From Haliotis rubra (taxonomy: Eukaryota): 64,000 bases of DNA. The translations under genes were made by a program, and so were the position numbers. The DNA lies in contig NW_025766747.1 of NCBI RefSeq assembly GCF_003918875.1, positions 248,001-312,000 of the forward strand, read 5' to 3'. This document shows, piece after piece, positions 2,074 to 63,200 of the stretch (positions are counted from its first letter, which is position 1; each line of letters begins with the position of its first letter). The notes below the pieces were generated by a model. The model did not search any database, had not been told where the DNA came from, and saw only the letters and a program-made list of their open reading frames with translations.

Positions 2074-2100
2074 TTTATATGCCCCGTTCAGATAATCCCC
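2074..2100 (-). promoter_or_regulatory. Core promoter of Fox copy 1: TATAAA plus TAATCC site
   Basis: tttata at 2074-2079 (TATAAA on minus strand), TAATCC at 2093-2098, and a CCAAT box (gattgg) at about 2221. Confidence 0.65.
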
Positions 2101-4647
2101 TCGACACGCGCTTTACAGATCTCATTTGTTTCTAGAGTAGGCGACCATTGATACGTAAATTAGATTGATCTCAAACCTAGTAATTGGGATCTCAAATACA
2201 TGGTACCTGTTATCTGCTCCGATTGGTTATGCACCAGATTTGAACTCCGCCTCTGCTTAAGTAGTTTTACAGTCAATGTACAGCTTTGAGTGTGTTGATA
2301 AGTTGACATAGAGAAAAACATTATGTAGCAATTGATAGGTTAATTAGATTTGTGGATGTAATGGGTGTGTCCTCAATCACGTGACACTGTCAATTACTTC
2401 TGGCCAGGACAATAGCCCTGCCTCCAGGCAGCAATACCTTGTTGCTTCTTTACGACCTTCATGTTACATGTAAAAGACACATTCACAAATTTATATCTAG
2501 AACAGAAATATTATGTCAATTGCTCTGCTTAAGTAAAATGATGCAAATTTGAAGGACTTGATCCTTTCCAGAAATCATAAGGGGAATTTTGCGATGGTAC
2601 GTCATAACCTGCCCAATGAACATGAAATTGGTATGTATGTCCAATATAACTGATCACGGTATCATGGAGACGTGTTACTTAGCTACGTTTATGTCATACA
2701 GCTAATGTCACCACAGTTCAGTCCCATTCTGTCTAGAAACATAAATATTGGTCATCACAAAAAATAACATCCAGTTTTGTGACAGAAGCTACAATGATGG
2801 TCGTTGTTCTAAGTATTGGTGCAGAGAGCAGTGCTTCAAGTTAAGGATTTCGACGAAGTTGTGGAAAAGGCTCTTTGTTGACTTGTTTGTTAATTATATT
2901 AGGGTGAAGAAATATGTTGGTTCAGTGCAATCAGATTTGAGTACCCTGCCTTTCGTGGCTGATGGGATACATTAATTCTGAAAAACAATTTAGTTGTTTG
3001 TAAGAGCTATGAATATATATACTGGTACCTGTATACACAGGCAAGTGGCAAGTGTAGAATATTGGCAGCTAGCCGCTTTTGCTGATATTACGTAGACAAT
3101 GTCACAGCAATTATCTCCACCCCACAGTTGCAGTGCTAAGTATTTTATAGATATATTTTCTAACCTTTTTTTAAAATTGTGCACATTTATCTCTGCTCAT
3201 AACTATCGACACGCCTTCCAGGTATATGCGTCTCAGTGTAAGGTTGACTGTGTTTATGAGCATGGGTGTATACCTATCAATCGTGTCTCATAAGATCCAT
3301 TGGTAGGACATTGCAATCCACTGTTTTATTAATCCTGATTCGTATTACTGTATTTCACATTTATTTTTACAGAACCTGAACTTCCGATCTGGAAATACAC
3401 AATGGCTAAATGTACTTCCACAACACAAGCGACACAAGATGACGACAGGAACACTGGCTCACAGACGAGTCAAACAGTGACAATGATAGTTTCTGTAATA
3501 ATGAAACGCTAATTGCAGCTAATAAAATGTCACTACGTGTTGCTTGAATGATGAGCATCACACCTTGTATCGAAATCCTTACCCAGGGGCGTCAGGTGAA
3601 ATACCGTGTCTCCCCCGGGCCTATCTCCCTGACTTTTCCTGAGTAATTTCCAGGGTCAATATTGAACCACGTGTACTAACTTCGTGACATGCTTTTCAGC
3701 ATGGTATAAATCCGATTTGTAGCAACCAGGTTACGTAATACGTAAATCCAATATCTACGGCCACGCCCATCAAAGATATACACTTGCTGTGCATGACATG
3801 CAGGTATATGAGATTCCTATTTGTCCAGTGTACCATGTAGATTGTTCCCATGTGTATCATTATAACCAGTTAAAACTAATTTACGCAGTGTTACTAATAT
3901 GAATATAAATTATGAGTTACTATTACATGGCAATGCAGATCCGACTGTTCGCATAAATTAAAACATGTTTAAAATTGTTCAAATCAATCAAAAGAATATT
4001 TTAATTATTGTCATTATTCCACTGTTTCCCCATCATTCTGTCTATCTTGCTTAAAGAAAGTAAATAATATTTATGAACTCACTACGAAGAGGGTGTTCTA
4101 AGTTGTATAACCTGTACCCAATTCTTTTCTCGTGATTAATATATGTTTAAACAAACTAGTTTATCCATCTATGTTTCGTTCAGTAATGTTCTGCTTTCAT
4201 GTGAATACGAAGTCCTCACAACATAACCAAAATATACAAGTTAATATCAACAAGGTGGAATTTGCCAGGTAGCAACTGACATTCACAGGCTATGTCGAAT
4301 TACAGCATTTACTCAACAGTACTGATCACCATACATACTGTTTCACAGCATACCACTGGGTCTATTGATCCCACCTTAACAAGCACTGTTGATATCACCA
4401 AGTGGATGTGTAAATCTGAGTCATAATCTCTTTTGACCACATGTTGGTGTTTTAGCATCACAAAGACGCTGCTCGTGGTCCATGGTCCTCAACATTACAT
4501 AACTCTAACAAACCAGTTTAAACCAGATTAAATACGGGATAGCTGATGTATCCAAATTCTTTCGAATGTTTAATGAAACCTTTACTGAGGTATTTTTCGA
4601 GATCCTCTCACAGATTTGTAACACGTGTTGCATGTCCTAATCGGTAG

Positions 4648-4805
4648 TACGGTAGGGTAGCCTAGTGCTTATAATTAACGTGATCTCTCGCCATGCCGGG
4701 GTTCGATTCTTTACGTGCGTACATGTGTGAAGCCCCTTTTCTCGTTTTCCTCGCATTGATACTGATGGAATGTCGCTAAAGCGGCGTAAAAACAGACTCA
4801 TTTAC
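4648..4805 (+). mobile_element. tRNA-derived SINE family A, degraded copy
   Basis: gggtagcctagtg (A box), gggttcgattc (B box), gcggcgtaaaa tail; similar to the 29650 copy. Confidence 0.7.
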
Positions 4806-5065
4806 TTATCAGTGTCAAGTCGATGAAAACGTGTGACGTATTTAACCTCCCCACCGTTACACATTGCTGATTCTGGTGGACGCTGACATGGACACACTAT
4901 GTACATTGCCTTCATACCAGGTTACATTGGGACGGTAGAACACCACGTGACCACCATGAACAACACAATAACATCGGTTCTCATATTGTGCAAATTTGTG
5001 ACATCTCAGCAAAATCGCCACTAAAACTAGTGAAACAAATTATACGTATCTGAGGACAAACTGGC

Positions 5066-5215
5066 ACAAGTAATCGTAACGGGGAGACTTAATATTGCGC
5101 TAAATGAGTTGTCTCTACACTCACTGACATCACAACAAATCAACACCATGCTGTGTCACATTGTCAGGTCATATAACAGCAGAAACAACATCCAATCTGT
5201 GTCAGGAGCGATCTA
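5066..5215. promoter_or_regulatory. Recurrent non-coding module A upstream of Fox copy 1 (first of two local copies)
   Basis: caagtaatcgta-ggggagacttaat-tgagttgtctctacactcactgacatcacaa; repeated at 5905-6030, 34772-34910 and 40932-41080. Confidence 0.55.
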
Positions 5216-8745: not shown

Positions 8746-8747
8746 AC

Positions 8748-14201: not shown

Positions 14202-14210
14202 CCAGGTTGA

Positions 14211-15086: not shown

Positions 15087-18000
15087 ATGGCTGAATTTAC
15101 ACGGTCATCGTCTGCCACATCAACTCCATCGGGCCCGAAAGAAGAGACACTTCTTGAAAACTATTTCCTTCTGCTCAGCCAGTTTGCCTATGATAAGGCC
15201 AAGGAACTCACTGTATGTTTAAGTCCACTGATTTGTGTATCCTACTGTCTCAAAATCCAATACTCAACGTATATAATCTTCTTCAGCTATCTTAATACAG
15301 TCAGAAGATGGCTTTGTAAAATAGGCCTCGACTTCAAAACACTCTGCTCATTTAATCAAGGAATGTACAGATGCAAAGTGCAGAACGATTGAGAAAGTGA
15401 GTTTATTTTACGCCGCTTTTAACAATAATTCAGCAATATCACGGCGGGGGACACCAGAAATGGGCTTCACACATTGTACCCTTGTGGGGAATTGAACCTG
15501 CGTCTTCAGTGTTACGAGTGAATGCTTTAACCACAAGGCTACCCCATCGCCCTGCAAAGTGGAGTTATAAGAGTTATGAGATAAGTCTATATGCACTCTA
15601 TGGAGTGCAGTAGGTATCACATTACTTGCTGTAATGCACTGCTATAGAGCTTGTGAATATTTTTCCGGTAGCTGATATGCCATGTCTGTTTGACCCAGAT
15701 TTCGACAGGCCATTTCATGTAAAATGTTTCAGGCTACAGTATTTAATTGTGTTAAGGCCATCAGATCACTCTGCTGAGTTTCAGATACTGCTGCAGGTTA
15801 TGCAAGGTATGACCACCACATAATGACGACTAAATGAGATATTTTGAGGGACCAAATCTTTACTCTGACACAACCGTAAATTTGACACTTTAAAGTTTGA
15901 CACAACAGTGTTTGACTGTGATTCAGTTTTAAGGACCATCCTGAGAAGACCTGTCTGGAGCTGACGTAATAGAAGGACTTCTGTTTTAGGTGTAGTTACC
16001 TTGCGACAATCTACAGCAGTAGACTTGCACTTGTTACCATGGTATAGAGGAGGCTATTTCTGGGTGTTTCAGGAGAAGGATAAAGATGTGCACAAGCTGT
16101 CCGCAGCTGCCTCCTGGGGCACCATCATCCAATGTCTGTCTCAGCTGGCCGCGGCAGAGAAGATGTACATGTCCCTCACCTTCCTCGGACAAAAGAGGTT
16201 TAATCCCATTGGACGAGCCAGAGAGGTATGCTGTGTCTACGCATTCTAATACTTGATAATATCCTAATGAGAGTGAAGCAAAACAATATTTGGCTTTATG
16301 ATACATGGGATACATCATCTTTAAAAGCATCCCAAGAAATACTATATATCAGTAAACAATATAATCTATACTACACAAACAAAGTCAAGGAACATCCAAT
16401 TCAGTGCCATTTAAATACAGGTTCAATATCATAATAAGAAAGAATTTGATGTTCTTTAACTTTTTTTGAGTAGTATATTCATTGGGTAATTGAAATAATA
16501 CACTTTGCTATAATCATTTTGAACATACTGTTAAACTGAGATAACACATTGCTGCCCTGGGGAGATACTGCGTCAGAATTTGTCTTCAGTAACTGTTGCT
16601 AGTTGTAAGAGGCCATTACATGATCGGTTGGTCGGACTTGGTTCATGCATTTCATTGTATCCCAACTGTGTAGATCTATCACTGGATCTAGGCCAGATGT
16701 AGTATTATACTCACTGCTGCCATATAGCTGTGATATTGCCAGTGTGTGAAATAACCACTGGCCCGCTAGCATCTGGCTAGTAAAAACCCAGTCGGGCTAG
16801 TAAATCTCCCCAGTTACTGGCCCGACTGGATGGTGAATTTTGATGTGGTCATTTTGTAAATATACTACAAAAAAAAAAAAGGGAACACCCTAAAATTTGA
16901 TAGTCGTATATAAACTGAAACGTGGTGAGGTCATTTATACACTAAGGTAAATGCAACTTTTTGTGTGCTTAATATGCACTTTAAACGACATGTTGGAACA
17001 TGCAGTGAAGCAACTGATTCAATATTCGTTGAGTTTGAGTGAAATGAAGCATTGTTAAAAACAGCGAAAAACAAGGATGCTGAAACACACCAGCACCATG
17101 TTTGATTCAAACCCCCAAACACAACAGCCTAGTGCTAGTTTTGTTTTGTTTTCGTTTGTATTCTCCTTTAAGCATTTCTTTGTGCAGAACCTGCGTTGTT
17201 TTTGTTATCTCTTTACCTAAATGAACAATTACCAGTTCTTGGGTCAGGAGTTCCAGCGCATTGACAGCTTGTCTCAGACCCCAGTGACTGCTCGCTCGGA
17301 CCTGGAGGTTCTCTTGGCACACCTCAGTGGTCAGCTGAGTCACTACCTCACTGCCAGACAGAGACTCATGGATCTGTATCCTTCCAACTCTTCTATCAGT
17401 CTATCGACGATAACTACAAATTTATGTCTACTTTAGGACAAATGTATCTATGACATAACCTACAGATTAAATGCCATGTTTCAAAATTTGACATCATGCT
17501 TGTGCCAATTTGTTATGTTTTAAAATTCAATGCTTAAGCATCAGTTGTTTTTTGTTATCTCTTTACCTAAATGTTAAATTATGTGATTATGAACATGACC
17601 ATAACTGGAGCTGTTGTAGTGGTAGACCTGTTTAACATCAATATAGTGAAGAAATCTACAATTTGTGTCTGTTTGTTTGTTAGTATTACAAGATTGTGTT
17701 GTCCATTTAACGAAACAAGATATGAGCAGATCTCTTCTGTTGCCGTGCACAGGAATGTGAGTTTTGATGACCTGGTTACCATGGTTACTGACATCATACA
17801 GGCTCACAGTCGGGGGTTCCATCATCCACTCCTCAGCCCTCTCAAGTCCAGCTTCAGGTAGAGATTGAACCATTGTTCTCACCCTTGAGTAGGCTGATGG
17901 GGTAGCCTTGTAGTTAAAGCATTTGCTTATCATGCTGAAGAACAGAGTTCGATTCCCCACATGGGTACACTGTGTGCAGGTAATTTCTGTTGTCCCCACC

Positions 18001-21000
18001 ATGCTGGAATATTGCTAAAACAGCATGAAGCCTTACTCACTCATCCCTGAGTAAGTGAGCACTGCTTACAAGAGTACAGAATACCAGCGTCACAACACTG
18101 CAATGGCATTGATGGCTCCTGATACCAGACAGCTGGTATTGCCATGTGTTGTGTTGCCAGCCTGGAGTGTGGTGTTGACTTGTGTCCTTGTGTTGCCAGC
18201 CTGGAGTGTGGTGTTGACTTGTGTCCTTGTGTTGCCAGCCTGGAGTGTGGTGTTGACTTGTGTCCTTGTGTTGCCAGCCTGGAGTGTGGTGTTGACTTGT
18301 GTCCTTGTGTTGCCAGCCTGGAGTGTGGTGTTGACTTGTGGCCTTGTGTTGCCAGCCTGGAGTGTGGCGTTGATAGTTGTCCATGTGTTGCCAGCCTGGA
18401 GTGTGGTGTTGACTTGTGTCCTTGTGTTGCCAGCCTGGAGTGTGGTGTTGACTTGTGTCCTTGTGTTGCCAGCCTGGAGTGTGGTGTTGACTTGTGGCCT
18501 TGTGTTGCCAGCCTGGAGTGTGGCGTTGATAGTTGTCCTTGTGTTGCCAGCCTGGAGTGTGGTGTTGACTTGTGGCCTTGTGTTGCCAGTCTGGAGTGTG
18601 GCGTTGATAGTTGTCCATGTGTTGCCAGCCTGGAGGGTGGTGTTGACTTGTGTCCTTGTGTTGCCAGCCTGGAGTGTGATGTGATGCGCCACCTACTACA
18701 GGCCCAGATACTCATGTCAGAGTGGCAGTGTCTCCCCTCCCTGCTGCAGTTAAACCAGGCCCACACCAAGCTGGCTAGCTGGGCCAACATGGCGGCCATC
18801 AAAGAGGTGAGTTGTGGGTGACCAATGTTTCCAGTATGGCCAGGTAGCTATATCATCTTTGCAGCAGCATAGTTCATTGCACTTAAAACACTACAAGTAC
18901 TTTCACATCTGTATCAGCTTGTCTTCATCAATCTTGTAGCAGTCTGTTAGTAACATATCACCTCTCTGGCATAGATGCATAGTGTTTACAACTCTGACAT
19001 ATTCCTGATTGTAGTAAGCATGGTAGGGATGAGAGCAGAAGGATGCTTGTATGATTATATACTGTAACTGCCTGTCATGTTCATAATCCCTGTCATTTTG
19101 TTCAGCCTGCGTCCAAGGATAAGCCTACACCGGTAAGCTTGATGGTAGAAACATTGCTGTCACTTGTAGGCTGGGGAACAAGTTGCTTTGTAGTCTGTGT
19201 GATGTGTCATCTCTTTCTTATCTTTGGAATTAATTCTGTGTGGCTTTTATATGTTGTGTGTAACCAATGGTTTCACAATCTGTATACTGGAAATGGAAGG
19301 TTTCGTGTGCTAATATCACTAACATCAGGAGGTTGCTGAACATGATGTCAGCGACAGGCAGGAGCGGTGGGGTAGCCTAGTGGTTAAAGCATTCGCTTGT
19401 CACTCCGATGACTCATGTTTGATTCCCCACATGGGTACAATATGTGAAGCCCATTTCTGGTGTCCCCGCCGATGATATTGCTGGAACAATGCTATAAGTG
19501 GCGTAAAAGTAAACTCACTCACCCATTCACCGCTCAAACTCCAAACCATGTTAGCATAGTCAGTGATCTGATTCCGCCAGTGTCGATTAAAATAGGGCCC
19601 CAGCATATGAATGTGTCATCAGAGACAACCTGGTTCCCCTGGTGTCATTGATTCCTCAGGGGTGGGACATTGTACATGATAGAGTTCACTGGTGTGTCTG
19701 GTCGAAGCACAGTTTCTCTAAGTGATACAACTGCTGTTGACAACAGCACAAATGGTTTTTAACATCTCTATCACACAAAGTACAATACATCAATGCAGTG
19801 TGTTGGATCCCTGGCTACTCACACATCCGTAGGCATCTTGAACTGTTCTGTATATTGGCAGAGGTACAGATAAGCTGCGTATCTGCATAAATTACGCAAA
19901 TATTTATGTGAAAACTCAATTCCTATTAAGTCTATTGTGTACAAGTACGCTTGAATATTTGTAAATACTCAATAAATGTGATCTTACATGCGTACACACA
20001 AAAATGTCAAATCTTAGCTTGCGTACCGGTGGATAGATAAAATAACAAGTATATTGAGACGTTCTATTTCAGGACATGAACATGACAACTTGCAGTCTTT
20101 CTTATCGTTTCTCATATTACAGATCAAATATAAATAACAAGCATTAACATTTAGACTTTACTATATTTTCAAATTTAATGGAAAATGGCAAAATACCCAA
20201 TTGAGTTTGAGTGAGTTGAGTACAATATATTTGGTTACTCAAAGAAAAATTAGGATACCCAATTGAGATGAACACAAGTGAGTACTTAACTCAATTACCC
20301 AAACAGTTATCTGTAGCTCTGTTTTGGTTTTAGGTGCTAAGATATTCTTCAAATCACATTTCACTACCCAGCTATGTTTTCAGTGTTCATCATGATGTTG
20401 TGGTCATTATATGTGAATGGAAATATATGCTGGACAGAAACTACCCCTTCCCCCTTTAAGCCTTGCTGGAGTGCTGAAGTCAAACTGTTTCATTCCCATC
20501 AGCACCATACAGGTTGTATGTTACATGAAACACACCAAAAAGTTCAGATAGTTGGCAGTGCAAATTTGTGTAAATCAGTAAATCACACTACTACTCAGGA
20601 ACAGACTTGCTGATATTTTGTATATGCACCTTAAAGGAAGATCACTTGTTTTATATATATTAACACAGATGACATAGATAGTACACATATAAAAATGGGT
20701 GGTTCTCAACACAGTTTCATTAGAGTCAGTGAGTGAGTTTAGTTTTACACCGTACTCAGCAATAGTCCAGCTATATGAGGGCGGTCTGTAAATAATCTAG
20801 TCTGGACCAGACAAGCCAGTGATCAGCATCTTGAGCATCGATCTACGCAATTAGGATATGATGACATGTGTCAATCAAGTCAGCGAGCCTAACCATCCGA
20901 TCCCCAGTTTGATAAGAACAGATATCACCTGTAGATATGACTTGGTCTTCAGTAAATGATTTTATAACATTTTGTAATATTTAAAACCTAGTACCGGGGT

Positions 21001-30720: not shown

Positions 30721-31767
30721 TTAGGGGTAGTTTTCCGTGTTCCTGGTGGAGGGTATAGAACTGAAAGACTGTCGTGTATATGGGGACACATGATAATGAA
30801 GGTTTTCATCAGCACAGGACCCTTGGGAGCTCACTTGAGGCATATAGGTTCCATTCTGGGGAGAGCTGGAGAGAGGGGAGCCGGTCAGGGAGCTGTTGAT
30901 GCTGCTGGCGTTGTAGTAGCCGGCTGGTGGAGAGTAGACTGTAGGAGATCCCATTGTCCAAGGACTGGAATCAGGCTTGCTCGATATGCTGTAGGGGTGT
31001 CTCTGGGTCAGTCCCTGGGGTAAAGAGCCGAGACTGAGGGGGTTGAAACCTGTGTAAGGAGATGGGCCCCCATACCATCCGAATAACTGTCCATAAGAAC
31101 TAGCAGGATGGAATGGAAGATCATCTCGACGTTGCTTTTGTGCCGACTTGAAACGTTTGGAACGACGAAGGAAACTACCGTTACCGAACATGTCCCCACA
31201 AGATGGATGCAGAGCCCACAGGTTACCCTTGCCTGGTTTCCCTGGAGGTCGGGGCACCTTGACGAAACAGTCATTGAGGGAGAGGTTGTGTCTGATGGAG
31301 TTCTGCCATCTCCGTTGGTTGTCTTGGTAGTAGGGAAATCTCTTGATGATGTAGTTGTAGATGTCGTTGAGAGTCATCATGCCTGTAGTGGAACTCTCGA
31401 CGGCCATGGTGATGAGAGCCACGTATGAATAGGGAGGCTTCTTGTTGGAAAATTGTCTGCTTTGCTGGGACAGAGTTGACGTTCCTGAGACAGTGCCTAG
31501 ACTTGTGTCTTCTTCCCCATCGTTGTCGGAGCTCAAGGAGGAAGATGGTGATGGCAAGGTGATGTGGTCGTTGTCTGGAGAATGTTGCTGTTGAAGGGGG
31601 TCCCTCATGTCTATAGGAGAGAGTTCAGACCTGACGTCGGGTTCACGTACACCAAACTTGGACGAAGTAGGGTGATGTTGTGTTGCATATAGCGGTGCCA
31701 TCGTCATAGCCGTTGATGGGTCAGCAACAGCACCTCCATACTGAAACGTTGTTGGATTAAACAGCAT
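30721..31767 (-). CDS. foxAB: FoxAB-like forkhead transcription factor, copy 2 (348 aa, intronless)
   Basis: Intact ORF with forkhead domain; TATA at 31842-31849 and TAATCC at 31859-31864 upstream; AATAAA signals near 30515-30530. Confidence 0.9.
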
Positions 31768-33189
31768 TTTGTATTCTCAGAGAATCCTGTATACTGTACT
31801 CGAGCAGCAGTGAGACTATACCTACATACTGGGCCGGGGTGTATATATATCCGTGTAATAATCCCCAAAGAAAACAACTAGTTGCAAACATTTCTCCAAG
31901 TACAAAAAGGGTAGTTATTGTTAATGTACACTGATTGGACTAAATCCACAATGCCCCGCGAGAGGTGTGGCTAGTTTGTCAGTATTGTATTTTCCGAAGT
32001 GCTATTGGCTACTGCATCACAGTTACCCCGCCTACTTGTCCGCAGCTCCTCAAGTAACCACGCCTCTATTTTCGCCTTGGTCACCAGTGTGTTGTTTTAA
32101 CCATGTTGGCCTTGCAGTTGTTTCTCACGAACGTGTTCAGTCATTTTGTAAAATGAATGATGTTGTTTTGCTTAGGCGATGAACTGAAAAATCTGTAAAT
32201 TTAGTTTACCAAGATAACGAATTTCAAACAAGTTTATTAAGAATTCCATTTCCCATAAGATTATATAAACATCAAAACAAGAAGTTTATACCTTTTGGAT
32301 TCTGACCAAGTATGATAAATCTTTGTAATATTTTCTGCATAATGTTTAATCGGTCTGTTAAAAAAATGCACAGATTTATGGTTTAAACATATTTGTATTT
32401 CGCCAAAGCCGAAACCTGTATAAGAGAACAAGCCTGGTGGCTTATATAAACGCCGCTCCAGTATATTTTTCCAATGACTGGATACATAAATGAAATAATT
32501 TGGCAACAAAAGAATAATAGAGAGACAAAATAACAGATATATGATTGAGTAATGAATATGTTCGTTATGGTGTTGGTTATGCCTAGCAACGAAATGAGCT
32601 GCTGCAGAAAATCAAGTTATATAAAATTTGTCTTACACTGAATATATATTTTGAGGTGATAATCACTGGAAGCGGTTACTTTTAGAAATGAACTGGTGTA
32701 ATGAGTTGATAATTTTACTATTAGTTGAGTTATTCAATGCGCCGTTACCGTATAAAGTAGTTTTAACATCGTATCCTTGAATATGAAAATACACAGATTT
32801 ATCAGCCAGTTAAATAAGGTCTGAAATGTTTTGGCATTTTATTTATTTGATATTATCGTATCAATTTACGATATAGATGCTTATACAGATATGGGGTAGT
32901 GGGGTGTACACATCGACACAAGCGAGCCACGGTAAATATGAGTTATTTGTGACCTACTGTGTACATGTTGTATATGAACATATAGTACTGGTGAGATATA
33001 ATGACGGTATGTAAGTTGTTTATGCTTGTTCTCATGTTGTCAGTGTTAATAATCGCGGGAAGCGCCACGTGCTGCCAGCATGCTGACGGAAAGAATCATC
33101 CCAAACCGAACATTTTCCAAATAGGAAACAGTCGAAGTTAACAGAGAAACTTGTTTACACAGAAGCTGCACATCTGATCGGGAGGTATC

Positions 33190-38427: not shown

Positions 38428-39504
38428 TTACATAAAGTTAGTGTATTGGTTTCCCAAAGGTTGAATGGACTTTGTAGCACTGGGGAGTGATTGCTGTACT
38501 CGCTGGTACAGAGAGTCATAAGGATTTCTAGATCTCTCAAAGCTGGACGATGAAACTTGAGGCATATAGGTCCCACTCAGGGACGAGCTTCCCGGCGGAG
38601 AGCTGGAGAGAGGGGAGCCGGTTAGAGAGCTGTTGATGCTGCTGGGGTTGTAGTAGCCGGCTGGTGAAGAGTAGACTGTAGGAGATCCCATGGTCCAAGT
38701 ACTGGAATCAGGCTTGCTCGATGTGCTGTAGGGGTGTGTCTGGGTCAGCCCCTGGGGTAAGGAGCCGAGACTGAGGGGGTTGAAACCTGTGTAAGGTGAT
38801 GGACCCCCATACAATCCGAATAACTGTCCATAAGAACTGGCAGGATGGAATGGAAGATCATCACGACGTTGCTTTTGTGCCGACTTGAAACGTTTGGAAC
38901 GACGAAGGAAACTACCGTTACCGAACATGTCCCCACAAGATGGATGCAGAGCCCACAGGTTACCCTTGCCTGGTTTCCCTGGAGGTCGGGGCACCTTGAC
39001 GAAACAATCATTGAGGGAGAGGTTGTGTCTGATGGAGTTCTGCCATCTCCGTTGGTTGTCTTGGTAGTAGGGAAATCTCTTGATGATGTAGTTGTAGATG
39101 TCGTTGAGAGTCATCATGCCTGTAGTGGAACTCTCGACGGCCATGGTGATGAGAGCCACGTATGAATAGGGAGGCTTCTTGTTGGAAAATTGTCTGCTTT
39201 GCTGGGACAGAGTTGACGTTCCTGAGACAGTGCCTAGACTTGTGTCTTCTTCCCCATCGTTGTCGGAGCTCAAGGAGGAAGATGGTGATGGCAAGGTGAT
39301 GTGGTCGTTGTCTGGAGAATGTTGCTGTTGAAGGGGGTCCCTCATGTCTATAGGAGAGAGTTCAGACCTGACGTCGGGTTCACGTACACCAAACTTGGAC
39401 GAAGTAGGGTGATGTTGTGTTGCATATAGCGGTGCCATCGTCATAGCCGTTGATGGGTCAGCAACAGCACCTTCATACTGAAGCGTTGTTGGATTAAACA
39501 GCAT
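38428..39504 (-). CDS. foxAB: FoxAB-like forkhead transcription factor, copy 3 (358 aa, intronless)
   Basis: Intact ORF; N-terminus and 5' UTR nearly identical to copy 2 but C-terminus distinct; TATA at 39579-39584, TAATCC at 39594-39599. Confidence 0.9.
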
Positions 39505-40931
39505 TTTGTATTCTCAGAGAATCCTGTATACTGTACTCGAGCAGCAGTGAGACTATACCTTCATACTGGTCCGGGGAGTATATATCCCTGTAATAATCCT
39601 CCACAAAAACATCTTACAATTCCAATTTGTTCCCAGAGAGCAACTCTATTGTTAGGTAATTGTACCCCCGGGAATTACCGGAGGTCCGGCCAGTGTAAAT
39701 GTAGCATAGATGCTATTGGCTACTTGTAAACAGAGGTCCCGCCTACGTGTTTAGACACCAATCACATTGGTAGTGTAAGCTCTCGCCTGACGCTGGATGC
39801 AATGAGAAATGCCTACCTGATTGTGAAATATTTTAGCTAAATATTTCTTATTTCTTCATAAGCCGAATAAACTATCATTTGTGCTCAGTGTCTTTCTCTA
39901 CAATAGAATTTTGAGCACAATGCAACACTTCTAATTACAAACGTACACATTTAGAGAAAGGCTTATTAGTCCGTTATTCATTGATGTAGTGAAACCCGTA
40001 TCCATAGGGTTCCGGTAGCCTGAGGGTTATCTTGTACATGTCAACTTCTAAAGCTTAAGTCAACATTGATGTCATAACCCTGTAAAACAGACGACATTTT
40101 AACAAATCTATCTAAATCATAAAGTTTTATCCGAGGGTAAAAACGGAAATGATCGCCTTCAAAATATTAAAATATGTCCACATGTATATTTAGATCCACA
40201 TCAATCTTCTCAGTGTATCATATTTGCAGTCGTTCTGTATATTGAAATGTTAATGTCATGAATGCTAAAAAAGGACATATCACAGTCCACTATGAGTGAA
40301 GGGCTGAGTAGGCCACACTTGTTGTCAAAGGTTGTGCATATACTGAGTGACGACTACATGCTTGTACATACTGAACCTAGCGATACCTGGCGACACATTC
40401 AGGGTGACAGACTGTTAGTAACGTGTTGTACTGGCGTTGTAAGGGAAAGGTCACATGCTGAAATAACCATCACATGTCGAAAACACCATGGGTCCTGGAA
40501 ATAGTAATCGAAGACATACAGCTTCTTTAAAAAAGTTTCAACACTTACTGACTTGAGAACAGAGCAGTATCAATTATGACTGAAATAACATCCAATCTGC
40601 TCCAGCAGCCGAGTGGCATCAGCATCCTGTAAACATACTTACATACAATATACATACACCGGAGAAATGGGCAGGATTGTAATGAATAACTAAACAGGCA
40701 CGTATTCGTGCTAACTGATATAGGTGTTGCTCAATTTTTCATTTGTTACAACATATTTTGTGTTTGTAGTAGTTAACCGAATATTGACAATTATTTCTTT
40801 TGAATTGAATTCTCTTGAATCTGTTTGTGTACCTGTATTGATTATATGCACGAAGAGTATGTTTTTAGACTGAACAGTGACAATATGGTGAAATGCTCAG
40901 ACAATACTGATATGACATGTTCATTAAGGAT

Positions 40932-43316: not shown

Positions 43317-43716
43317 TCAACTCTCGACGACCATGGCGATGAGAGCCACATAGGAATAGTGAAAACTGTTTGTTTTGTTTGGAGATAGTTGACGTTCCTG
43401 AGACACCATCAGGAGGACTAAAACCTTCCTCATCGTCGTTGTCGGAGCTCAGCGAAGATGAAGGAAAAGAGAATGCCTCAATCAGGTTGCTTGAAGGTTC
43501 CTGTTCAAACTTACATACGTTGTTATTATTGCTGCTGAATGCAACCCCGAATTATCTTCTGCTACAAATGACGTCTGCCACTAGCCGTGTATTGTACAGA
43601 GTCAGGGATCAGAAGGTGCATGTACAGTGTACGGTAGTGGCAGGTGTTTTGTCGTGACCAGTGTATACAGTCTATCAGTGTTGTTAAGTGGAAACATATA
43701 TGTAAAATAACAACAT
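43317..43716 (-). pseudogene. Deleted FoxAB-like pseudogene (seventh copy)
   Basis: Minus strand translates [34 protein letters not shown], then a frameshifting deletion of NKKPP, then YSYVALIAMVVES-stop; the rest of the forkhead is absent. Promoter relic gagattatcc at 43794-43803. Confidence 0.8.
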
Positions 43717-44266
43717 GACGGAGTCCCAGGAGACATTGGACGCTGAGACTTGCTTGCAGTCATGATTTCTACAGAGGGAAATATACTGTAACTGAGATTA
43801 TCCTCTGATGACACATCACATACATTCAATGTACCCTTGACTTGGCTTGATGAGACTGAAGTGGCCGCCAGGCACACAGTTAGAGGTTGGGGCTTGCTAA
43901 TCCAGAATAAATGTCGGACCGGGATCAGTCGGCTGTTCCTCCAAAATCTACAGTCAAGTGGTTAATATCAGCGACTAAAGTCTTCAACGCATTTGTACAA
44001 TAAGGACACACTCTTTATCTAACAGTTTAAGTCATAACGTAGTTATTTTTACATATATTTAAACATCAAATTCAGACGAAGTATTTAGCCTTGATTTCCT
44101 TCCCGAATTGAAACATGTCACCATGACGATCAGTGCCACACACAACATATTAAAATCTGTGTATTGTTGCCAAGTTTCTGTTTCTTGTCGGCTCCAGCAT
44201 GCAGTGAAGGTGTCCGGCTTCCTGACTGGAACGGACACCCTCCCATGATGCTCCGTCAGAGCAACA

Positions 44267-45978: not shown

Positions 45979-47067
45979 TCACTTCGACATCCCGAAAAAA
46001 GACATATTCAGAGCAGCTCCTGTGAACGTTGGATAGAACTGAGGAGAGGAATAATTATACAAATTCTGAATAGCACTGGAGTTCGGTGATTCTGGGATGT
46101 ATGTCCCTGGCAGAGGCGGGTTTCTCGACTGGACAGAGGGCATCTGTGGCATATAGGCCGTTTGATGTCCTGGGGGAGTGCTGGAGAGAGGGGAGCCGGT
46201 CAGGGAGCTGTTGATGCTGCTGGCGTTGTAGTAGCCGGATGATGGAGAGTAGAGTGAAGGAGATCCCATAGTCCAGGTACTGGGGTCAGTCCTGCTTGTG
46301 CTGGGGTGTGTCTGGGCCAGTCCCTGGGGTAAGGGGGAAAGAGATAGGGGGTTGAAGCCTGGGTAGGGGGACTGACCCCGGTAAAGACCAAGCTTTCCAT
46401 ATGCTGTGAACCGCTCAATCAGCGCGTCGTCTTGTCGTTGTTTGTGTCCTGACTTGAAACGTTTAGCACGACGAAGGAAACTACCGTTACCGAACATGTC
46501 CCCACAAGATGGATGCAGAGCCCACAGGTTACCCTTGCCTGGTTTGCCTGGAGGTCGGGGCACCTTGACGAAACAATCATTGAGGGACAGGTTGTGTCTG
46601 ATGGAGTTCTGCCATCTCCGTTGGTTGTCTTGGTAGTAGGGAAATCTCTTGATGATGTAGTTGTAGATGTCGTTGAGAGTCATCATGCCTGTAGTGGAAC
46701 TCTCGACGGCCATGGTGATGAGAGCCACGTATGAATAGGGAGGCTTCTTGTTGGAAAATTGTCTGTCTTGTTGGGTTTGAGTTGACGTTCCTGGGACATC
46801 ATCAATGTGTACATCGTCATTGCCGTCCTTGTCTGTGCATGGTGACGGTGACGGCAGAAGGTCTCCGCCAGGGGAGTCTGTCTCTTCTCGGTATGTGGCT
46901 CTAAGAAACATGTCTATTCCCTTTGGCGTTCCAAGAGGCGCAGTGGACTCCGGTGTTGCCGGCGCAATCGTAAATGTTTGAGGCCCCATGTACGGAGGTG
47001 TCTCGAGCTGCATCACGGCCTCGCCAGTCACGCTGCCGTACGGAGATAACAGTGTATGATTCAACAT
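45979..47067 (-). CDS. foxAB: FoxAB-like forkhead transcription factor, copy 4 (about 362 aa, intronless)
   Basis: Intact ORF from ATG 47067; only copy with RRAKRFK; TATAAA at 47129-47134 and gagattatcc at 47144-47153. Confidence 0.9.
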
Positions 47068-47894
47068 GGTCACGGTGATGTAGCAGTGAAGGTACAGTGT
47101 TGTATACCGTCGTCACCCCGTCCATGGGTTTATATTCCCCGCCGAGATTATCCCCTCAATGCAGTTTGTTTTGTCTCTTGATTAGTCAGCCATTGTTGGG
47201 TAATTTGGAATGGGTCGTGTATTATACAACAGGCACGTCTTTAATTGGTCGTTCATTCCTAGTGGCCGGCTCATCTGCAGCTACGCCCACCATTGTCCAT
47301 TCTATTAGGCCGCCCCAGTTTTAGATAGGTCAGGGAATTTGGGTCGTTTTATTCAGTTTTATTATTGTATTTCTTCATGCATATCCCAAAGCCGATTTTA
47401 GTCTGTAAAGTGAAAAAGAAAATGCAATCAGAAACGTAGATAATGCTATACTGTCTCACAAACATATTAGTCTTGAAGGTCACACATACATGCTGATAGA
47501 TATAGTGTACAACGGTAGCAGTCCTATAATGTTGGTGATGTATTAAAGTACACGCGAAGCTGGTGCACTAAATAGCTTATTTGGCATGAACCACTTAAAG
47601 ATGAAAAATAATGATAGAATACTTTGCATGTTCGCGATCGTATATACAAAATGCATCCAAGGTATCAATTGAAGCAGTAGTACACCTAGGGTATCCAAGC
47701 GTTGTATCCGCCGTGTTGGTAAGGGAAATCTTTGCTCTTGTCACACAGTCTTGCGGAGATGTTTTTGTCACTCTCACACATACTCTTTGAGAAAAGATTT
47801 GAGCACGATTCTTATTTTGTAAACAATCTAAAAAGCGAAAATACATCAACGTACACTTGTGTTTGTAGGGGTAGGTTTGAAGCTGAAGTGCAAA

Positions 47895-55874: not shown

Positions 55875-56967
55875 TCACTGATCACAGTCTAATGCTGTAC
55901 TGAGGCTGGGGTAAAGGTGGCCCCTGTACAACCGGGCTGAGAAGTGCTGTTGTAGAGCGAGATACGAAGTGTGGGTCTGGTCCGACAGGGCTGATGGCTT
56001 GTCTGTGCTGTATACCCGTTCGGGCCCTGAATGAGAGCTGGAGAGAGGGGAGCCGGTCAGGAGCTGTTGATGCTGCTGGCGTTGTAGTAGCCGGCTGGTG
56101 GAGAGTAGACTGTAGGAGATCCCATAGTCCAGGTACTAGGGTCGGGGTTGCCTGGTGTGCTGCAGGAGTGTGTCAGTCCTTGGGGTAAAGGGCCAAGATT
56201 AAGGGGGCTGAAACCTGGATAGGAAGATGGAGCCCTGTAAAGCCCAATCTGTCCGTACGGACTGACGTGGTGTAGAGTAGCGTTGTTGCAGTGTTGTTTT
56301 GGGGCCGACTTGAAACGTTTGGAACGACGAAGGAAACTACCGTTACCGAACATGTCTCCACAAGATGGATGCAGAGCCCACAGGTTACCCTTGCCTGGTT
56401 TGCCTGGAGGTCGGGGCACCTTGACGAAACAATCATTGAGGGACAGGTTGTGTCTGATGGAGTTCTGCCATCTCCGTTGGTTGTCTTGGTAGTAGGGAAA
56501 TCTCTTGATGATGTAGTTGTAGATGTCGTTGAGAGTCATCATACCTGTAGTGGAACTCTCGACGGCCATGGTGATGAGAGCCACGTATGAATAGGGAGGC
56601 TTCTTGTTGGAAAATTGTCTGCTTTGCTGGGACAGAGTTGACGTTCCGGGGAAGTTGTCAAGGCTGAGATTGATATCACCGTCGTTGTCAGAAGATAACG
56701 AAGATGATGGTGATGGCAGGAGGCTGTCGTCATCGTGTACTGAAAGGTGATAATGGTCGCTGTGCGAAGTCTCCTTGAGTTTGTTATCCAATCCATTTCC
56801 TGAAAGAGGCGCTTGCTGAGGCCTGCGTTTTACTATCGACGAGTGAGATACAGGTGAAATGGGGGGACGTCGGAGACGACACCTGCTGCACCATAAAGGG
56901 GGGTGGTATCGTCTCCATTACAGTACATCTGGAAGGTGTTTAAACACTGAACAGCTGAACTCGCCAT
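55875..56967 (-). CDS. foxAB: FoxAB-like copy 5; two apparent -1 frameshifts in G runs (young pseudogene or assembly error)
   Basis: ATG 56967 ([15 protein letters not shown]) lies about 60 nt below TATAAA 57027-57032. One extra base in G6 at 56861-56866 joins the forkhead ORF 56057..56791. gg at 56060-61 is ggg in copies 2, 4 and 6; restoring it extends the frame to TGA at 55875-55877. Confidence 0.75.
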
Positions 56968-57882
56968 ATTCACCCAAAGGAACAGGAAGGTACGCTTTAG
57001 TGTCGATACTATCCACAACTCTGGCATTTATAGCAAAACCGATTCATATTCCATAAGCGGACAAACTAGGAAACAATACAAGTAACATGCAGAAGAAGAA
57101 AGTCCAGTATGCGTTAATTAAACGCCTGCTGCCATTGACCGATCTCACTGTGCTTGTCTTTCTATTGTTGTAGGTGCGGGGATGTTCAGCTGCCCCAGAT
57201 CGCCCGAGGTTTAGCTATTATACAAAGCAAACACTTATTATCTGTGTTGACTCAAACATTTCACGCTCGTTAACATCTACTTATGTGTGTAGGTTTAAAC
57301 GATTTGTACAAAGACAACTAGAACCCAAGAAGTACTCTGTATGCCATTACAACTTGATTTAAACAGTATTTAATATGTAATACACAATAATGAATAATAC
57401 ATAAAGGATCAGTAAACAGACTGCATCAAGCCTAATTTTATAAATGCTTCTCCTAGACATAAACTTATAACGAATGAATTTTGTGGAAATACAGAAAATG
57501 AGCAGACAAATGCTTTCATAATTCAATAATTTCAGACTAAATACAGCATATGGAACCACACTTTATGAACAACGGTCGGTATCATTCAAGAAATTGTAAA
57601 CAGACAACTTGATACTCAGCATTACTATAGATCAGTAGCGAGCAGTTTTAATGTGATGATAATAAAATACATTTATAGTTATATTTCATTTTTGAATATT
57701 GGTTTCGTTAAGATTCGCGACTGACAATGGTGCGACATAACAACAGCTTGTCTTAACAACATGGTGACTCAACAACGATGTGAGAAGACATGACCAAAGC
57801 TTGTTGCCTCCCGCCTGTAGACATAAGCTGGCCGAGTCGGCCTCTTTGATGTCGTCATGCAACTAACGAGATTAAATCAGCT

Positions 57883-60583: not shown

Positions 60584-60720
60584 NNNNNNNNNNNNNNNNN
60601 NNNNNNNNNNNNNNNNNNNNNNNNNNNNNNNNNNNNNNNNNNNNNNNNNNNNNNNNNNNNNNNNNNNNNNNNNNNNNNNNNNNNNNNNNNNNNNNNNNNN
60701 NNNNNNNNNNNNNNNNNNNN
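60584..60720. other. Assembly gap (N run)
   Basis: Run of n. Confidence 0.99.
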
Positions 60721-60995
60721 CCCTTAAAGCATCTTCGCTGCAGCGTGATGTACAGTCACTGATACCTTAGTTGTGGTATCAAGAATCACATACAAATATT
60801 TGAAATAATGATATTTTATTATTTTAGCCACACATAAACACATGTACAGGATCACATTCATTCGCTTTTATGAAGATGCTGAATGTGACATGGAAGATGG
60901 ACCAGTGGTGTTAAAGAATAACATCATAGCACTTATGGATGCAAGTGGTACACAAAAACGTCTTAAATGTCAGATGATTAACAAAGTACTGTTCG

Positions 60996-62105
60996 TCAGC
61001 CAGTTTTCGCTTTGGTTACGGAATCGCTGACAGTATCATTTGTCTTGTTTTTTGGAAATGTCAAGGCTTGGTAAAGAGCTGGGTAAGTTGAAGGTGAGAA
61101 GTCAGGGAGAGAACCAGGGTATGGCATCTGTGACATGTAGGTCCAACCCAGGGGCGAACTTCCTGGGGGAGAGCCGGAGAGAGGGGAGCCGGTCAGGGAG
61201 CTGTTGATGCTGCTGGCGTTGTAGTAGCCGGCTGGTGGAGAGTAGACTGTAGGAGATCCCATAGTCCAGGTACTAGGGTCGGGGTTGCCTGGTGTGCTGC
61301 AGGAGTGTGTCAGTCCTTGGGGTAAAGGGCCAAGATTAAGGGGGCTGAAACCTGGATAGGAAGATGGAGCCCTGTAAAGCCCAATCTGTCCGTACGGACT
61401 GACGTGGTGTAGAGTAGCGTTGTTGCAGTGTTGTTTTTGGGCCGACTTGAAACGTTTGGAACGACGGAGGAAACTACCGTTACCGAACATGTCTCCACAA
61501 GATGGATGCAGAGCCCACAGGTTACCCTTGCCTGGTTTGCCTGGAGGTCGGGGCACCTTGACGAAACAATCATTGAGGGACAGGTTGTGTCTGATGGAGT
61601 TCTGCCATCTCCGTTGGTTGTCTTGGTAGTAGGGAAATCTCTTGATGATGTAGTTGTAGATGTCGTTGAGAGTCATCATACCTGTAGTGGAACTCTCGAC
61701 GGCCATGGTGATGAGAGCCACGTATGAATAGGGAGGCTTCTTGTTGGAAAATTGTCGATTTTGTTGTGAGAGAGTTGACGTCCCGGAAGCATCAATGCCG
61801 ACATGGTCGTTATCTGAACATGACGATGGTGATGATGTTTTACTGACGTCGTTGTCTGATGGGGTTGTCATGGCCCCAACATCTGGAGATAGCTGCAGAT
61901 TACCTTGTACGACATCAACGGGGTGAGTTGATTCCTCGGGATTTGGAAAAGACATATGCGGCTCCGGACTTGAGTTTGGAGACAAGAAGGACAACATCTG
62001 CTGCATGGAAGAAAACGACGACATCATGTTGGATAATTTGTCAGTTTCTTGATTGCTGTAGTGGAAGACATCCATACCAGGAACACTTGAGTTGGAGACC
62101 GACAT
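60996..62105 (-). CDS. foxAB: FoxAB-like forkhead transcription factor, copy 6 (369 aa, intronless)
   Basis: Intact ORF; core nearly identical to copy 5 with unique termini; TATA at 62184-62190 and TAATCC at 62200-62205. Confidence 0.9.
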
Positions 62106-63200
62106 AGTGATGTCTGTTAACTGGTGTTTCTACTCTGTGAGATACCGAAGAGTTTGTGTGTTCCACAGGTATTTCCAATATTCTTATATACGTTACACAT
62201 AATCCACTAAAACTACAACTCTCAGCTCAATAAAACCAATTAAACCAGCTATTGTCTGCTTAATTATACCTAATTGGCACATCAATCACAGAGAAGAGAC
62301 TGATTAAAATACTGCCATCTGATTGGTTGCCGATGACGAGGCCTACCCTGTAATCCTACGAGCACGACTTTAAAGGTGTTTAGAGAAGGCGTTTTTACAT
62401 GACTAGTTAAGATATACTTATGGAACATTTTCTTGTTTTCATTACCAATGTTCGAAATCTAGAAAAAACACCTCAATTCAAAAGTAAAATAATACTAATT
62501 TCTGGCAGATACACACCTGTTTCGTTGATACATGTACAAATAATTGCACAGTAAATACAATTCTAATTTGTGAATAAAAGAGGAAGCGTGAACGTATGTT
62601 TATTATATAATCTATTAGAAATATAAGTAAACCTCTGGATATAACTGTTGAATATAACACCCTCATTAAAGAACACTACTTGTTTTTGTTCAGGATATAA
62701 GATATGAATTCAATATTTCTAATTATGAGCAACATATACTCTTCAAACAAGTTGGGTATGCTTTAATCTTGTAGTATGTGTCGGTAGTCACAGGGTTGAA
62801 AATCCATCAGTTGTAACGTAGGTCTCCAAATGTTTAAGTTAAAAAAACCCTTTTAAAATGTTTCTCAAAAGCTCAATAAATGCATGTGTATAATCACGTA
62901 CTTCATAAACGAATGCTTTGTTACCTCCGTGTCTCGTTGGGCGTGGCATACATGTGTCACATAGACATGGAATGTCATTTTGTGTACATTGACTTTTTGT
63001 ATTGCATTGCTTTTTGTTTTATATGACGTCTTTTCTTTGCTACCAACTTGGTATGTGATGGTTGTATATTTGTGTTCTGTTTTGTGTTGTATTATTCATA
63101 TCGCCGCCATATAGGTGGAACATTTGCGAGTACGGCGTGAAACAACACACATTATTCATGGCCACATGATTGCCTTTTTCGTAACATTTGCCTGTTACTG

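What the first reader, a model, noticed from the sequence alone, without database searches (positions are those of the whole stretch)
2074..62205. Shared core-promoter grammar: TAATCC-type site just upstream of the TATA box in every Fox copy
Seen: TATA and TAATCC at 2074-79/2093-98, 31842-49/31859-64, 39579-84/39594-99 and 62184-90/62200-05. One-base variants sit at the same spacing in copy 4 (TTATCC 47148-53, overlapping AGATTA), copy 5 (TATTCC 57047-52) and the relic (43798-803), although the surrounding promoter DNA is mostly unalignable. Knowledge: TAATCC/TAATCT is the site bound by K50 homeodomain proteins (Otx, Pitx, Gsc). Inference: one conserved upstream input acting about one helical turn from TBP co-activates the whole array.
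Basis: partly seen in the sequence, partly recalled or inferred. Interest (0 to 1): 0.72.

Follow-up and report, generated by a model that had tools for sequence, protein, structure and literature searches.

The report
Homeodomain site beside FoxAB TATA boxes
A short Otx-type homeodomain recognition sequence sits 9-13 bases upstream of the TATA box in most copies of a tandem array of abalone FoxAB genes and in a limpet orthologue, so it is probably a real, old promoter element, though which protein binds it and where transcription starts are untested.

Summary
All seven coordinates are right. On the gene (minus) strand the layout is GGATTA, 9 or 13 nt, then TATAWA, with the TATA 65-88 nt before the ATG.

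The genes are six intronless FoxAB-class forkhead paralogues plus a relic, in an abalone (Haliotis) scaffold. TAATCC/GGATTA occurs at background frequency in the window. The composite with TATA occurs only at Fox promoters.

I compared eight independent promoters: six Haliotis paralogue classes, Patella and a neomphaline snail. GGATTA/TAATCC is the best-kept position-constrained hexamer (5 of 8; 0 of 1000 shuffles reach 5). It is kept better than either TATA variant. Patella has TAATCC-N13-TATATA in the opposite orientation. Copy 4 and the relic read GGATAATCT, which loses the antisense site and gains a sense TAATCT.

Parts of the claim are overstated:
- It is not in "every copy". The copy-5 class has lost it, and two H. 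asinina copies are mutated.
- Copies 2 and 3 are not independent, because they share a roughly 1-kb gene-conversion tract.
- The flanks are not unalignable. CCAAT, AACAATRG, a distal CTAATCWAG box and a G-run are also shared.
- A chiton orthologue lacks the site. Owenia was uninformative.

No RNA data were available, so the TSS and the Otx input remain inference. I rate it a moderately interesting new member of a known kind: a proximal K50 site next to a TATA box.

The parts
2093..2098 (-). Copy 1 proximal K50-type site. GGATTA on the gene strand, in the context GGGGATTATCT.
   Evidence: Kept in 3 of 3 H. asinina c1-type copies. Reads GGATAATCT in H. rufescens.
2074..2079 (-). Copy 1 TATA box (TATAAA). 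It lies 13 nt downstream of the site and 88 nt upstream of the homologous ATG at 1991.
   Evidence: The ATG at 2060 used by an NCBI model lies only 13 nt after the TATA.
1095..1991 (-). Copy 1 FoxAB ORF, intronless.
31859..31864 (-). Copy 2 proximal site, GGATTA.
31842..31849 (-). Copy 2 TATA box (TATATATA). 9 nt gap from the site, about 82 nt to the ATG.
30721..31767 (-). Copy 2 FoxAB ORF, 348 aa, with a forkhead domain.
   Evidence: PF00250, E 6e-37.
30885..31870 (-). Tract 96-100% identical between copy 2 and copy 3 (a gene-conversion tract). Its 5' edge is at the K50 site. Identity outside it is at random level.
   Evidence: The same pattern appears in H. asinina and H. cracherodii.
39594..39599 (-). 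Copy 3 proximal site, GGATTA.
39579..39584 (-). Copy 3 TATA box (TATATA). 9 nt gap from the site, 80 nt to the ATG.
38428..39504 (-). Copy 3 FoxAB ORF, 358 aa.
43795..43803 (-). Relic site, GGATAATCT. The antisense TAATCC is broken and a sense TAATCT is present.
43780..43785 (-). Relic TATA-like box (TATATT), 12 nt gap from the site.
43320..43464 (-). Relic coding fragment. It covers the region just before and into the forkhead domain. No forkhead domain follows it.
   Evidence: blastn 69-89% identity to the copies; tblastn E 0.001.
47145..47153 (-). Copy 4 site, GGATAATCT. It is a one-base variant of GGATTA that creates a sense-strand TAATCT.
   Evidence: H. cracherodii has the same sequence and H. 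asinina has GGATGATCT.
47129..47134 (-). Copy 4 TATA box (TATAAA), 67 nt to the ATG.
45979..47067 (-). Copy 4 FoxAB ORF, 362 aa. Identical to P0011.
57041..57052 (-). Copy 5 degenerate region, GGAATATGAATC. There is no TAAT core on either strand.
   Evidence: The same class in H. asinina and H. cracherodii also lacks the site.
57027..57032 (-). Copy 5 TATA box (TATAAA).
55878..56967 (-). Copy 5 coding region, spread over three reading frames relative to the H. asinina orthologue. It is either a pseudogene or carries assembly indels.
62200..62205 (-). Copy 6 proximal site, GGATTA.
   Evidence: Identical in H. asinina.
62185..62190 (-). Copy 6 TATA box (TATATA). 9 nt gap from the site, 85 nt to the ATG.
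60996..62105 (-). Copy 6 FoxAB ORF, 369 aa.
   Evidence: PF00250, E 7e-37.
47177..47196 (-). Copy 4 upstream boxes: ACAATGG followed by the distal CTAATCAAG. The same pair occurs in c1-type and c7-type promoters.

Best explanation
The element is a retained ancestral piece of the FoxAB proximal promoter. The module is a homeodomain recognition site of the K50 type (TAATCC or TAATCT, in either orientation), then a short G-run, then the TATA box. The single-copy gene of early gastropods carried it, and most members of the abalone-specific tandem expansion inherited it.

Most likely mechanism (inferred, not shown): a K50 paired-like homeodomain protein (Otx, Goosecoid, Pitx or a lineage-specific relative) binds 9-13 bp upstream of the TATA box. 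From there it modulates TFIID/TBP-dependent initiation, together with factors at the upstream CCAAT and AACAATRG boxes.

The site tolerates inversion. A single T-to-A change turns GGATTATCT (antisense TAATCC) into GGATAATCT (sense TAATCT).

The shared core gives most copies one common input. The divergent upstream DNA, for example between copies 2 and 3, can give each copy its own pattern.
For: Shown:
- The composite occurs only at Fox promoters in the window.
- The hexamer is present in 4 of 6 Haliotis paralogue classes. Across H. rubra, H. asinina, H. cracherodii and H. rufescens it is kept in 13 of 15 promoters of those four classes.
- By the protein tree the earliest-branching class (c7) has it, so it was present in the ancestor of the array.
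- It is the single best-retained position-constrained hexamer among 8 independent promoters: 5 of 8, with 0 of 1000 shuffles reaching 5.
- It is the top 1 of about 294 windows whichever promoter serves as reference, which is an internal control under the same phylogeny.
- The Patella caerulea orthologue has TAATCC-N13-TATATA at its only TATA in 500 nt. A neomphaline orthologue has TAATCG-N12-TATATA.
- In the promoters sampled, T-to-A changes in the core are seen only where they create a sense TAATCT: copy 4, the relic and H. rufescens c1.

From the literature:
- TAATCC and TAATCT are OTX2 ChIP motifs (PMC3189962).
- K50 motifs close to the TATA box drive Drosophila rhodopsin paralogues and invert between species (PMC8259978).
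- Capitella otx, gsc and foxAB are co-expressed in oral ectoderm (PMC4407770).
Against: - There is no binding, expression or TSS evidence. No RNA runs were offered and the reads laid did not cover the promoter.
- The copies are paralogues, so part of the sharing is descent. The shuffle null ignores this.
- Orthologous promoters within Haliotis are 70-90% identical throughout, so they add little power.
- The site is dispensable for gene survival. The copy-5 class lacks it yet has intact ORFs in two species. H. asinina has GGATCA in one c2-type copy and GGATGA in its c4 copy.
- The chiton orthologue has a TATA box without the site. Owenia foxAB-2 has no TATA.
- The Patella match has roughly a 1% chance probability. 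That becomes about 4% after allowing for four outgroups.
- Spacing is not fixed (9 to 14 nt).
Confidence: 0.5

Rival explanations
1. Passive inheritance. The hexamer is residual similarity of duplicated promoters in the slowest-decaying stretch next to the TATA box. Local gene conversion helps keep it, and the site has no function of its own.
For: - All Haliotis copies descend from one gene.
- Copies 2 and 3 are homogenised across the site.
- Forkhead-domain DNA is 97-99.7% identical among all copies even at third codon positions, so conversion is active in the array.
- The site has been lost or mutated in several copies that keep intact ORFs.
- The flanks (GG before the site, a G-run after it) are also partly shared.
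Against: - Apart from copies 2 and 3, the core promoters differ in spacing (9 vs 13 nt) and in flanks, so no recent conversion spans them.
- 88% of hexamer windows in the same promoters are retained in no other class, while this one is retained in 4 of 7.
- The site reappears in Patella in the opposite orientation. Descent of an unconstrained sequence would not produce that.
- The T-to-A changes re-create a TAATCT.
Confidence: 0.2
2. The element is functional but is not a K50 homeodomain target. It could be part of an extended core promoter read by the general machinery (a BRE-like G-run plus upstream contacts). It could also be bound by another factor, such as a Q50 or other ATTA-binding homeodomain protein, or a GATA factor at the AGATAA/GATAA versions.
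For: - A G-run directly upstream of the TATA box is conserved in Haliotis, Patella and the neomphaline.
- The invariant letters are GGAT-A rather than the whole K50 hexamer.
- Copy 1 reads AGATAA on the antisense strand and copy 4 reads GATAA.
- c7 reads GGATTAATTCC and Patella reads GATTAATCC, both quasi-palindromes with an ATTAAT core that other homeodomains could use.
- The neomphaline site is TAATCG, not a classical K50 site.
Against: - GATA-like readings exist only in the c1 and c4 forms, not in c2, c3, c6, c7 or Patella.
- What all positive promoters share is exactly TAATCC, the K50 optimum.
- The CC (GG) dinucleotide that distinguishes K50 from Q50 sites is invariant in 18 of 21 Haliotis promoters.
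Confidence: 0.2
3. Chance co-occurrence of two short AT-rich motifs.
For: TAATCC/GGATTA is at background density in the window (37 observed vs about 37 expected).
Against: - The composite occurs at four Fox promoters and nowhere else in the window in that orientation.
- 0 of 1000 shuffles reproduce the sharing.
- Background is 8 non-Fox composites in 650 kb of strand.
Confidence: 0.02

Closest known systems
Drosophila rhodopsin (Rh3/Rh5/Rh6) proximal promoters: the RCSI element with K50 (Otd/Dve) and Q50 (Pph13) motifs close to the TATA box (PMC8259978)
   Same: - A family of duplicated genes whose short proximal promoters share a homeodomain site a fixed short distance upstream of the TATA box.
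- The K50 motif is TAATCC.
- Motifs shift or invert between distant species.
- The shared core is combined with divergent distal motifs that give each paralogue its own pattern.
   Different: - RCSI is a P3-type palindrome (TAAT-N3-ATTA) bound by paired-type dimers. No P3 palindrome is present here.
- The genes here are transcription factors in a tandem array, not opsins.
- Function is demonstrated in flies and only inferred here.
Otx/Crx/Pitx/Gsc (K50 paired-like homeodomain) target sites in general, for example OTX2 ChIP motifs TAATCC > TAAGCC, TAATCT (PMC3189962)
   Same: The hexamers are identical, TAATCC in 4 copies and TAATCT in copy 4 and the relic. Either orientation occurs.
   Different: In human cells OTX2 motifs are depleted near TSSs (PMC3189962), whereas here the site abuts the TATA box. 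No binding data exist for any mollusc.
Spiralian foxAB genes (Capitella Ct-foxAB; Owenia foxAB-1/-2)
   Same: - The window's genes fall in the same clade as the two published Owenia foxAB proteins.
- They are intronless like foxAB-1.
- Capitella foxAB is co-expressed with otx and gsc around the mouth (PMC4407770).
   Different: - Other spiralians sampled have one or two copies. Haliotis has a lineage-specific array of at least 6-11 copies.
- No promoter analysis of any foxAB gene turned up in the library searched.
- The Owenia foxAB-2 upstream region has no TATA box.

Membership tests
FoxAB class of forkhead genes | Forkhead (winged-helix) DNA-binding domain | tested here: met
   PF00250, E about 6e-37, full-length match in copies 2 and 6. 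tblastn finds the domain in all six copies.
FoxAB class of forkhead genes | Phylogenetic placement with named FoxAB genes, apart from FoxB | tested here: met
   The Haliotis copies sit in a 100/100 clade of spiralian and echinoderm proteins. That clade contains P0042 and P0086, whose lengths and N-termini match the published Owenia FoxAB-2 and FoxAB-1. The Owenia FoxB sequence in the same supplement differs visibly in the domain. No true FoxA or FoxB sequence was included in the tree, so separation from those classes rests on the paper.
FoxAB class of forkhead genes | No vertebrate orthologue | tested here: inconclusive
   The best vertebrate hits are a mix of FoxC2, FoxE3 and FoxD3 and lie outside the clade. 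However, only the 8000 candidates sharing most words were scored.
K50 homeodomain (Otx/Pitx/Gsc/Bicoid-type) binding site | TAATCC, or the weaker TAATCT, core sequence | tested here: met
   TAATCC in copies 1, 2, 3 and 6. TAATCT on the sense strand in copy 4 and the relic. Absent in copy 5.
K50 homeodomain (Otx/Pitx/Gsc/Bicoid-type) binding site | Conservation at the same promoter position in orthologues | tested here: met
   Met within Gastropoda: four Haliotis species, and Patella with the site inverted. The neomphaline has TAATCG. Not met in the chiton. Owenia was uninformative.
K50 homeodomain (Otx/Pitx/Gsc/Bicoid-type) binding site | Occupancy by, and response to, a K50 homeodomain protein | not testable with these tools
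   Needs EMSA, DAP-seq or ChIP, plus reporter mutagenesis.
TATA-box core promoter | TATAWA consensus conserved at a fixed place upstream of the ORF | tested here: met
   Present in all 21 Haliotis promoters examined, in Patella and in the neomphaline, 65-88 nt before the ATG in Haliotis.
TATA-box core promoter | Transcription start about 25-35 nt downstream of the TATA box | not testable with these tools
   No RNA runs hold the locus. The laid runs were DNA contigs that did not cover the promoter.
Rhodopsin RCSI-type element | P3 palindrome TAAT-N3-ATTA next to the TATA box | tested here: not met
   No such palindrome appears in any copy. The resemblance is functional and architectural only.

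The most novel reading that the evidence does not exclude
The gastropod ancestor's foxAB gene carried a quasi-palindromic double K50 site, of the type GGATTAATCC, abutting its TATA box. Patella still reads GATTAATCC and the earliest-branching abalone class reads GGATTAATTCC. The module would then have survived several hundred million years. It would change orientation by single-base steps rather than being lost, and it would tie a whole lineage-specific array of FoxAB paralogues to one Otx/Gsc-type input in the early embryo or oral ectoderm. Gene conversion would keep the forkhead domain, and in copies 2 and 3 the core promoter, uniform.
Probability: 0.25. Interest if true: 0.55.

Novelty: new member of a known kind. 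Interest (0 to 1): 0.4.

Why it matters
FoxAB is a forkhead class lost in vertebrates and panarthropods. In annelids it is switched on in a few cells during cleavage and later around the mouth, and nothing is known about what regulates it.

This work gives a concrete, conserved and easily mutated 6-bp candidate input site beside the TATA box, in a gene family amplified to many copies in abalone. That makes a regulatory link testable with reporters or binding assays: an Otx/Gsc-type homeodomain protein acting on foxAB.

The array is also a tidy natural experiment. Copies with the site, with it inverted and without it sit side by side. Two copies share core promoter and coding sequence but have different upstream DNA.

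Tried and rejected
- RNA evidence for the TSS. The look-up of sequencing runs returned no RNA holder. Read laying on 38200-44199 gave only short DNA contigs from one sample, 1-3% different from the window, with zero cover over 39400-39800 and 43000-44199. It neither confirms nor questions the letters.
- More distant promoters. Gigantopelta has an N run exactly where the TATA should be, and I did not fill it. Two metagenome contigs encode FoxAB-like proteins, but their ORFs open after AT-rich, intron-like DNA, so no promoter is visible. Owenia foxAB-2 has introns and no TATA.
- A GATA-site reading fits only the copy 1 and copy 4 forms, so I rejected it as the shared feature.
- A Fox autoregulatory reading of the AAACAAA box has no canonical forkhead core in most copies. 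I did not pursue it.
- Between-species substitution counts within Haliotis have too little divergence to single out six bases.
- Earlier scan notes held nothing on this element.
- Literature searches found no paper on abalone FoxAB expansion or on foxAB promoters in the library.

Full report
**What is in the window.** Six ORFs on the minus strand encode forkhead proteins: 1095-1991, 30721-31767, 38428-39504, 45979-47067, about 55878-56967 and 60996-62105 (PF00250 at E about 6e-37). Each is a single exon. The best database matches are "forkhead box B/D/E-like" models from Haliotis species. One listed protein (P0011) equals c4 residue for residue, and two H. rubra models match c1 and c5 at 98%. 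The window is therefore an abalone scaffold, H. rubra or a very close relative.

**Gene class.** In a maximum-likelihood tree all Haliotis copies form one clade (100/99). That clade sits inside a 100/100 clade of spiralian and echinoderm proteins, apart from vertebrate FoxC, FoxD and FoxE. The larger clade holds two Owenia proteins, P0086 and P0042. Their lengths and N-termini equal the published FoxAB-1 and FoxAB-2 (PMC9539403). The genes are thus a lineage-specific tandem expansion of foxAB.

**The observation.** On the gene strand the four exact copies read GGATTA, then 13, 9, 9 and 9 nt, then TATAWA. The TATA box lies 80-88 nt before the ATG. Copy 4 (GGATAA, 13 nt), copy 5 (GGAATA, 14 nt) and the relic (GGATAA, 12 nt) are one-base variants, as stated. 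The relic is a real decayed copy, because a coding fragment of about 145 nt lies about 320 nt downstream at 43320-43464.

**Chance.** The hexamer alone is at background density: 19 and 18 occurrences against 18.7 expected per strand. The composite with TATA is found at four places only, all Fox promoters. In 325 kb of window plus fetched loci there are eight non-Fox composites over both strands. For any given TATA box the chance of a neighbour of this kind is therefore about 1%.

**Assembly gaps.** The three N runs lie outside all ORFs and promoters. The closest is 276 nt beyond the c6 stop codon. On both sides of each gap the sequence is collinear and co-oriented with H. asinina. I did not try to fill them. 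They bear only on inter-copy distances and on whether a copy is hidden.

**Independence of the copies.** c2 and c3 are 96-100% identical from about 31870, the site itself, to about 30885, and at random-level identity outside that tract. The same holds for the c2/c3 pair within H. asinina and within H. cracherodii, although the pairs differ between species. This is concerted evolution, so c2 and c3 count once. The forkhead-domain DNA is 97-99.7% identical among all six copies, including 90-99% at third codon positions, while the rest of each gene is diverged. Apart from c2 and c3, the core promoters differ in spacing and flanks, so recent conversion does not explain the shared hexamer.

**Orthologues.** I fetched 21 distinct Haliotis promoters from four species.
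- c1-type: GGATTA in 4 of 5; H. rufescens has GGATAATCT.
- c2/c3-type: GGATTA in 6 of 7; one H. asinina copy has GGATCA.
- c6-type: 2 of 2.
- c7-type (H. rufescens P0009), the earliest-branching class: 1 of 1, reading GGATTAATTCC.
- c4-type: never GGATTA; it reads GGATAATCT twice and GGATGATCT once.
- c5-type: lacks the site in all three species, yet has intact ORFs in two of them.

By parsimony the ancestor of the array had the site.

**Outgroups.**
- The Patella caerulea gene has a single TATA in its 500 nt upstream. Thirteen nt before it stands TAATCC on the sense strand, which is the opposite orientation.
- A neomphaline contig has TAATCG-N12-TATATA.
- Gigantopelta has an N run at that spot.
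- The chiton Liolophura has CCAAT and TATA but no such site.
- Owenia foxAB-2 has no TATA.

**Is it more than descent?** I took one promoter per independent class: six Haliotis classes, Patella and the neomphaline. GGATTA/TAATCC within a 12-nt positional window is shared by 5 of 8. No shuffle out of 1000 reaches 5, and 2% reach 4. That null ignores relatedness, so I also used the promoters as their own control. Of about 294 hexamer windows between -200 and +94 of the TATA box, 88% are kept in no other class. This hexamer is the single best-kept, in 4 of 7 others, ahead of either TATA variant (3 of 7), whichever promoter is the reference. In the promoters sampled, the T-to-A change that breaks the antisense TAATCC is seen only where the next bases are TCT, so that a sense TAATCT appears. 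This occurs in c4, the relic and H. rufescens c1. That pattern looks like site turnover under constraint, although the numbers are small.

The flanks are not empty. The following features are also shared:
- a G-run between the site and the TATA box, in Haliotis, Patella and the neomphaline;
- AACAATRG about 70-76 nt upstream of the TATA box, the second best-shared hexamer;
- one or two CCAAT boxes further upstream;
- in the c1, c4 and c7 classes, a distal CTAATC(A/T)AG followed by an AAACAAA box;
- two promoter subfamilies that are alignable within themselves: c1 with c4, and c2/c3 with c6 and c7.

"Every copy" is wrong, and "one input for the whole array" goes beyond the data.

**Mechanism.** TAATCC is the optimum of K50 homeodomains, and TAATCT is a weaker documented OTX2 motif (PMC3189962, PMC8259978). 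In Capitella, otx, gsc and foxAB are expressed together in oral ectoderm (PMC4407770). Owenia foxAB-1 and foxAB-2 peak at organiser specification and at gastrulation respectively (PMC9539403). I infer that a K50 paired-like protein binds 9-13 bp upstream of the TATA box and modulates TBP-dependent initiation. The variable upstream DNA would give copy-specific patterns. Whether the factor activates (Otx, Pitx) or represses (Gsc) cannot be told. The closest worked-out parallel is the Drosophila rhodopsin family. There, paralogues share a homeodomain element close to the TATA box, K50 motifs recur, and motifs invert in distant species (PMC8259978). That element is a P3 palindrome, which is absent here, so the resemblance is one of architecture, not of membership.

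**Limits.** There are no RNA data. The one read-laying run returned DNA contigs from a single sample that differ from the window and do not cover the promoters. The TSS, the binding factor and the function are all inferred.

**Verdict.** This is a real, conserved, gastropod-wide promoter footprint of K50 homeodomain type beside the TATA box of foxAB genes.

Noticed in passing
1389-1685, 31147-31443, 38884-39180, 46453-46749, 56309-56605, 61446-61742: The forkhead-domain DNA of all six copies is 97-99.7% identical, including 90-99% at third codon positions, and the protein domain is 99-100% identical. The N- and C-terminal coding parts and the promoters are strongly diverged. This points to domain-restricted concerted evolution across the array.
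   Followed up: partly
30885-31870 and the matching part of 38590-39605: Copies 2 and 3 share a tract of about 1 kb at 96-100% identity. It begins at the K50 site or TATA box and ends inside the C-terminal coding region. Upstream DNA is unrelated (CCAAT/TGTTTGC type versus AACAATAG/ATTGG type). The same mosaic recurs within H. asinina and H. cracherodii.
   Followed up: yes
55878-56967: Copy 5 matches its H. asinina orthologue in three different reading frames, with breaks near 56836-56896 and near 56058. It is either a pseudogene or carries assembly indels. Its 3' two-thirds are 99% identical in protein to copy 6.
   Followed up: partly
2058-2060: An NCBI H. rubra model of copy 1 starts at an ATG only 13 nt downstream of the TATA box. 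If the TATA box is used, that ATG is not transcribed and the homologous start is 1991. The H. asinina model uses the start homologous to 1991.
   Followed up: partly
1981-1986, 31754-31759, 39491-39496: A second TAATCC on the gene strand lies 8 nt after the ATG in copies 1-3, within codons for M-L/Y-F/N-N-P. It is coding sequence and possibly coincidental.
   Followed up: no
62351-62356; L010 about 9740: A second, distal GGATTA lies upstream of the proximal site in copy 6 (about 150 nt) and in Patella (about 55 nt). The c1, c4 and c7 classes instead have a distal CTAATC(A/T)AG about 45 nt upstream.
   Followed up: partly
L007 about 9887; L010 about 9795: The earliest-branching abalone class reads GGATTAATTCC and Patella reads GATTAATCC. 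Both are near the perfect 10-bp palindrome GGATTAATCC, which carries TAATCC on both strands. This may be the ancestral form.
   Followed up: no
L001, L005 versus L003, L004 (H. asinina chromosome CM074528.1): In H. asinina the array is split into two clusters about 1.5 Mb apart (53.74-53.85 Mb and 55.33-55.37 Mb) and has extra copies: three c1-type and three c2/c3-type. In the window the classes are contiguous.
   Followed up: no
24428-25321 and 17500-18850: Between copies 1 and 2 lie an ORF with a weak ApoL-like match and a C12orf66/KICS2-like gene with an internal repeat. Both are syntenic in H. asinina. Gap 1 (25452-25645) lies just upstream of the ApoL-like ORF.
   Followed up: no
31816-31830, 39551-39565, 47101-47110: A conserved GGTATA(G/C) block lies 27-32 nt downstream of the TATA box in copies 2, 3 and 4. 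It could be the initiator region or a second TATA-like element, and it leaves the exact TSS open.
   Followed up: no
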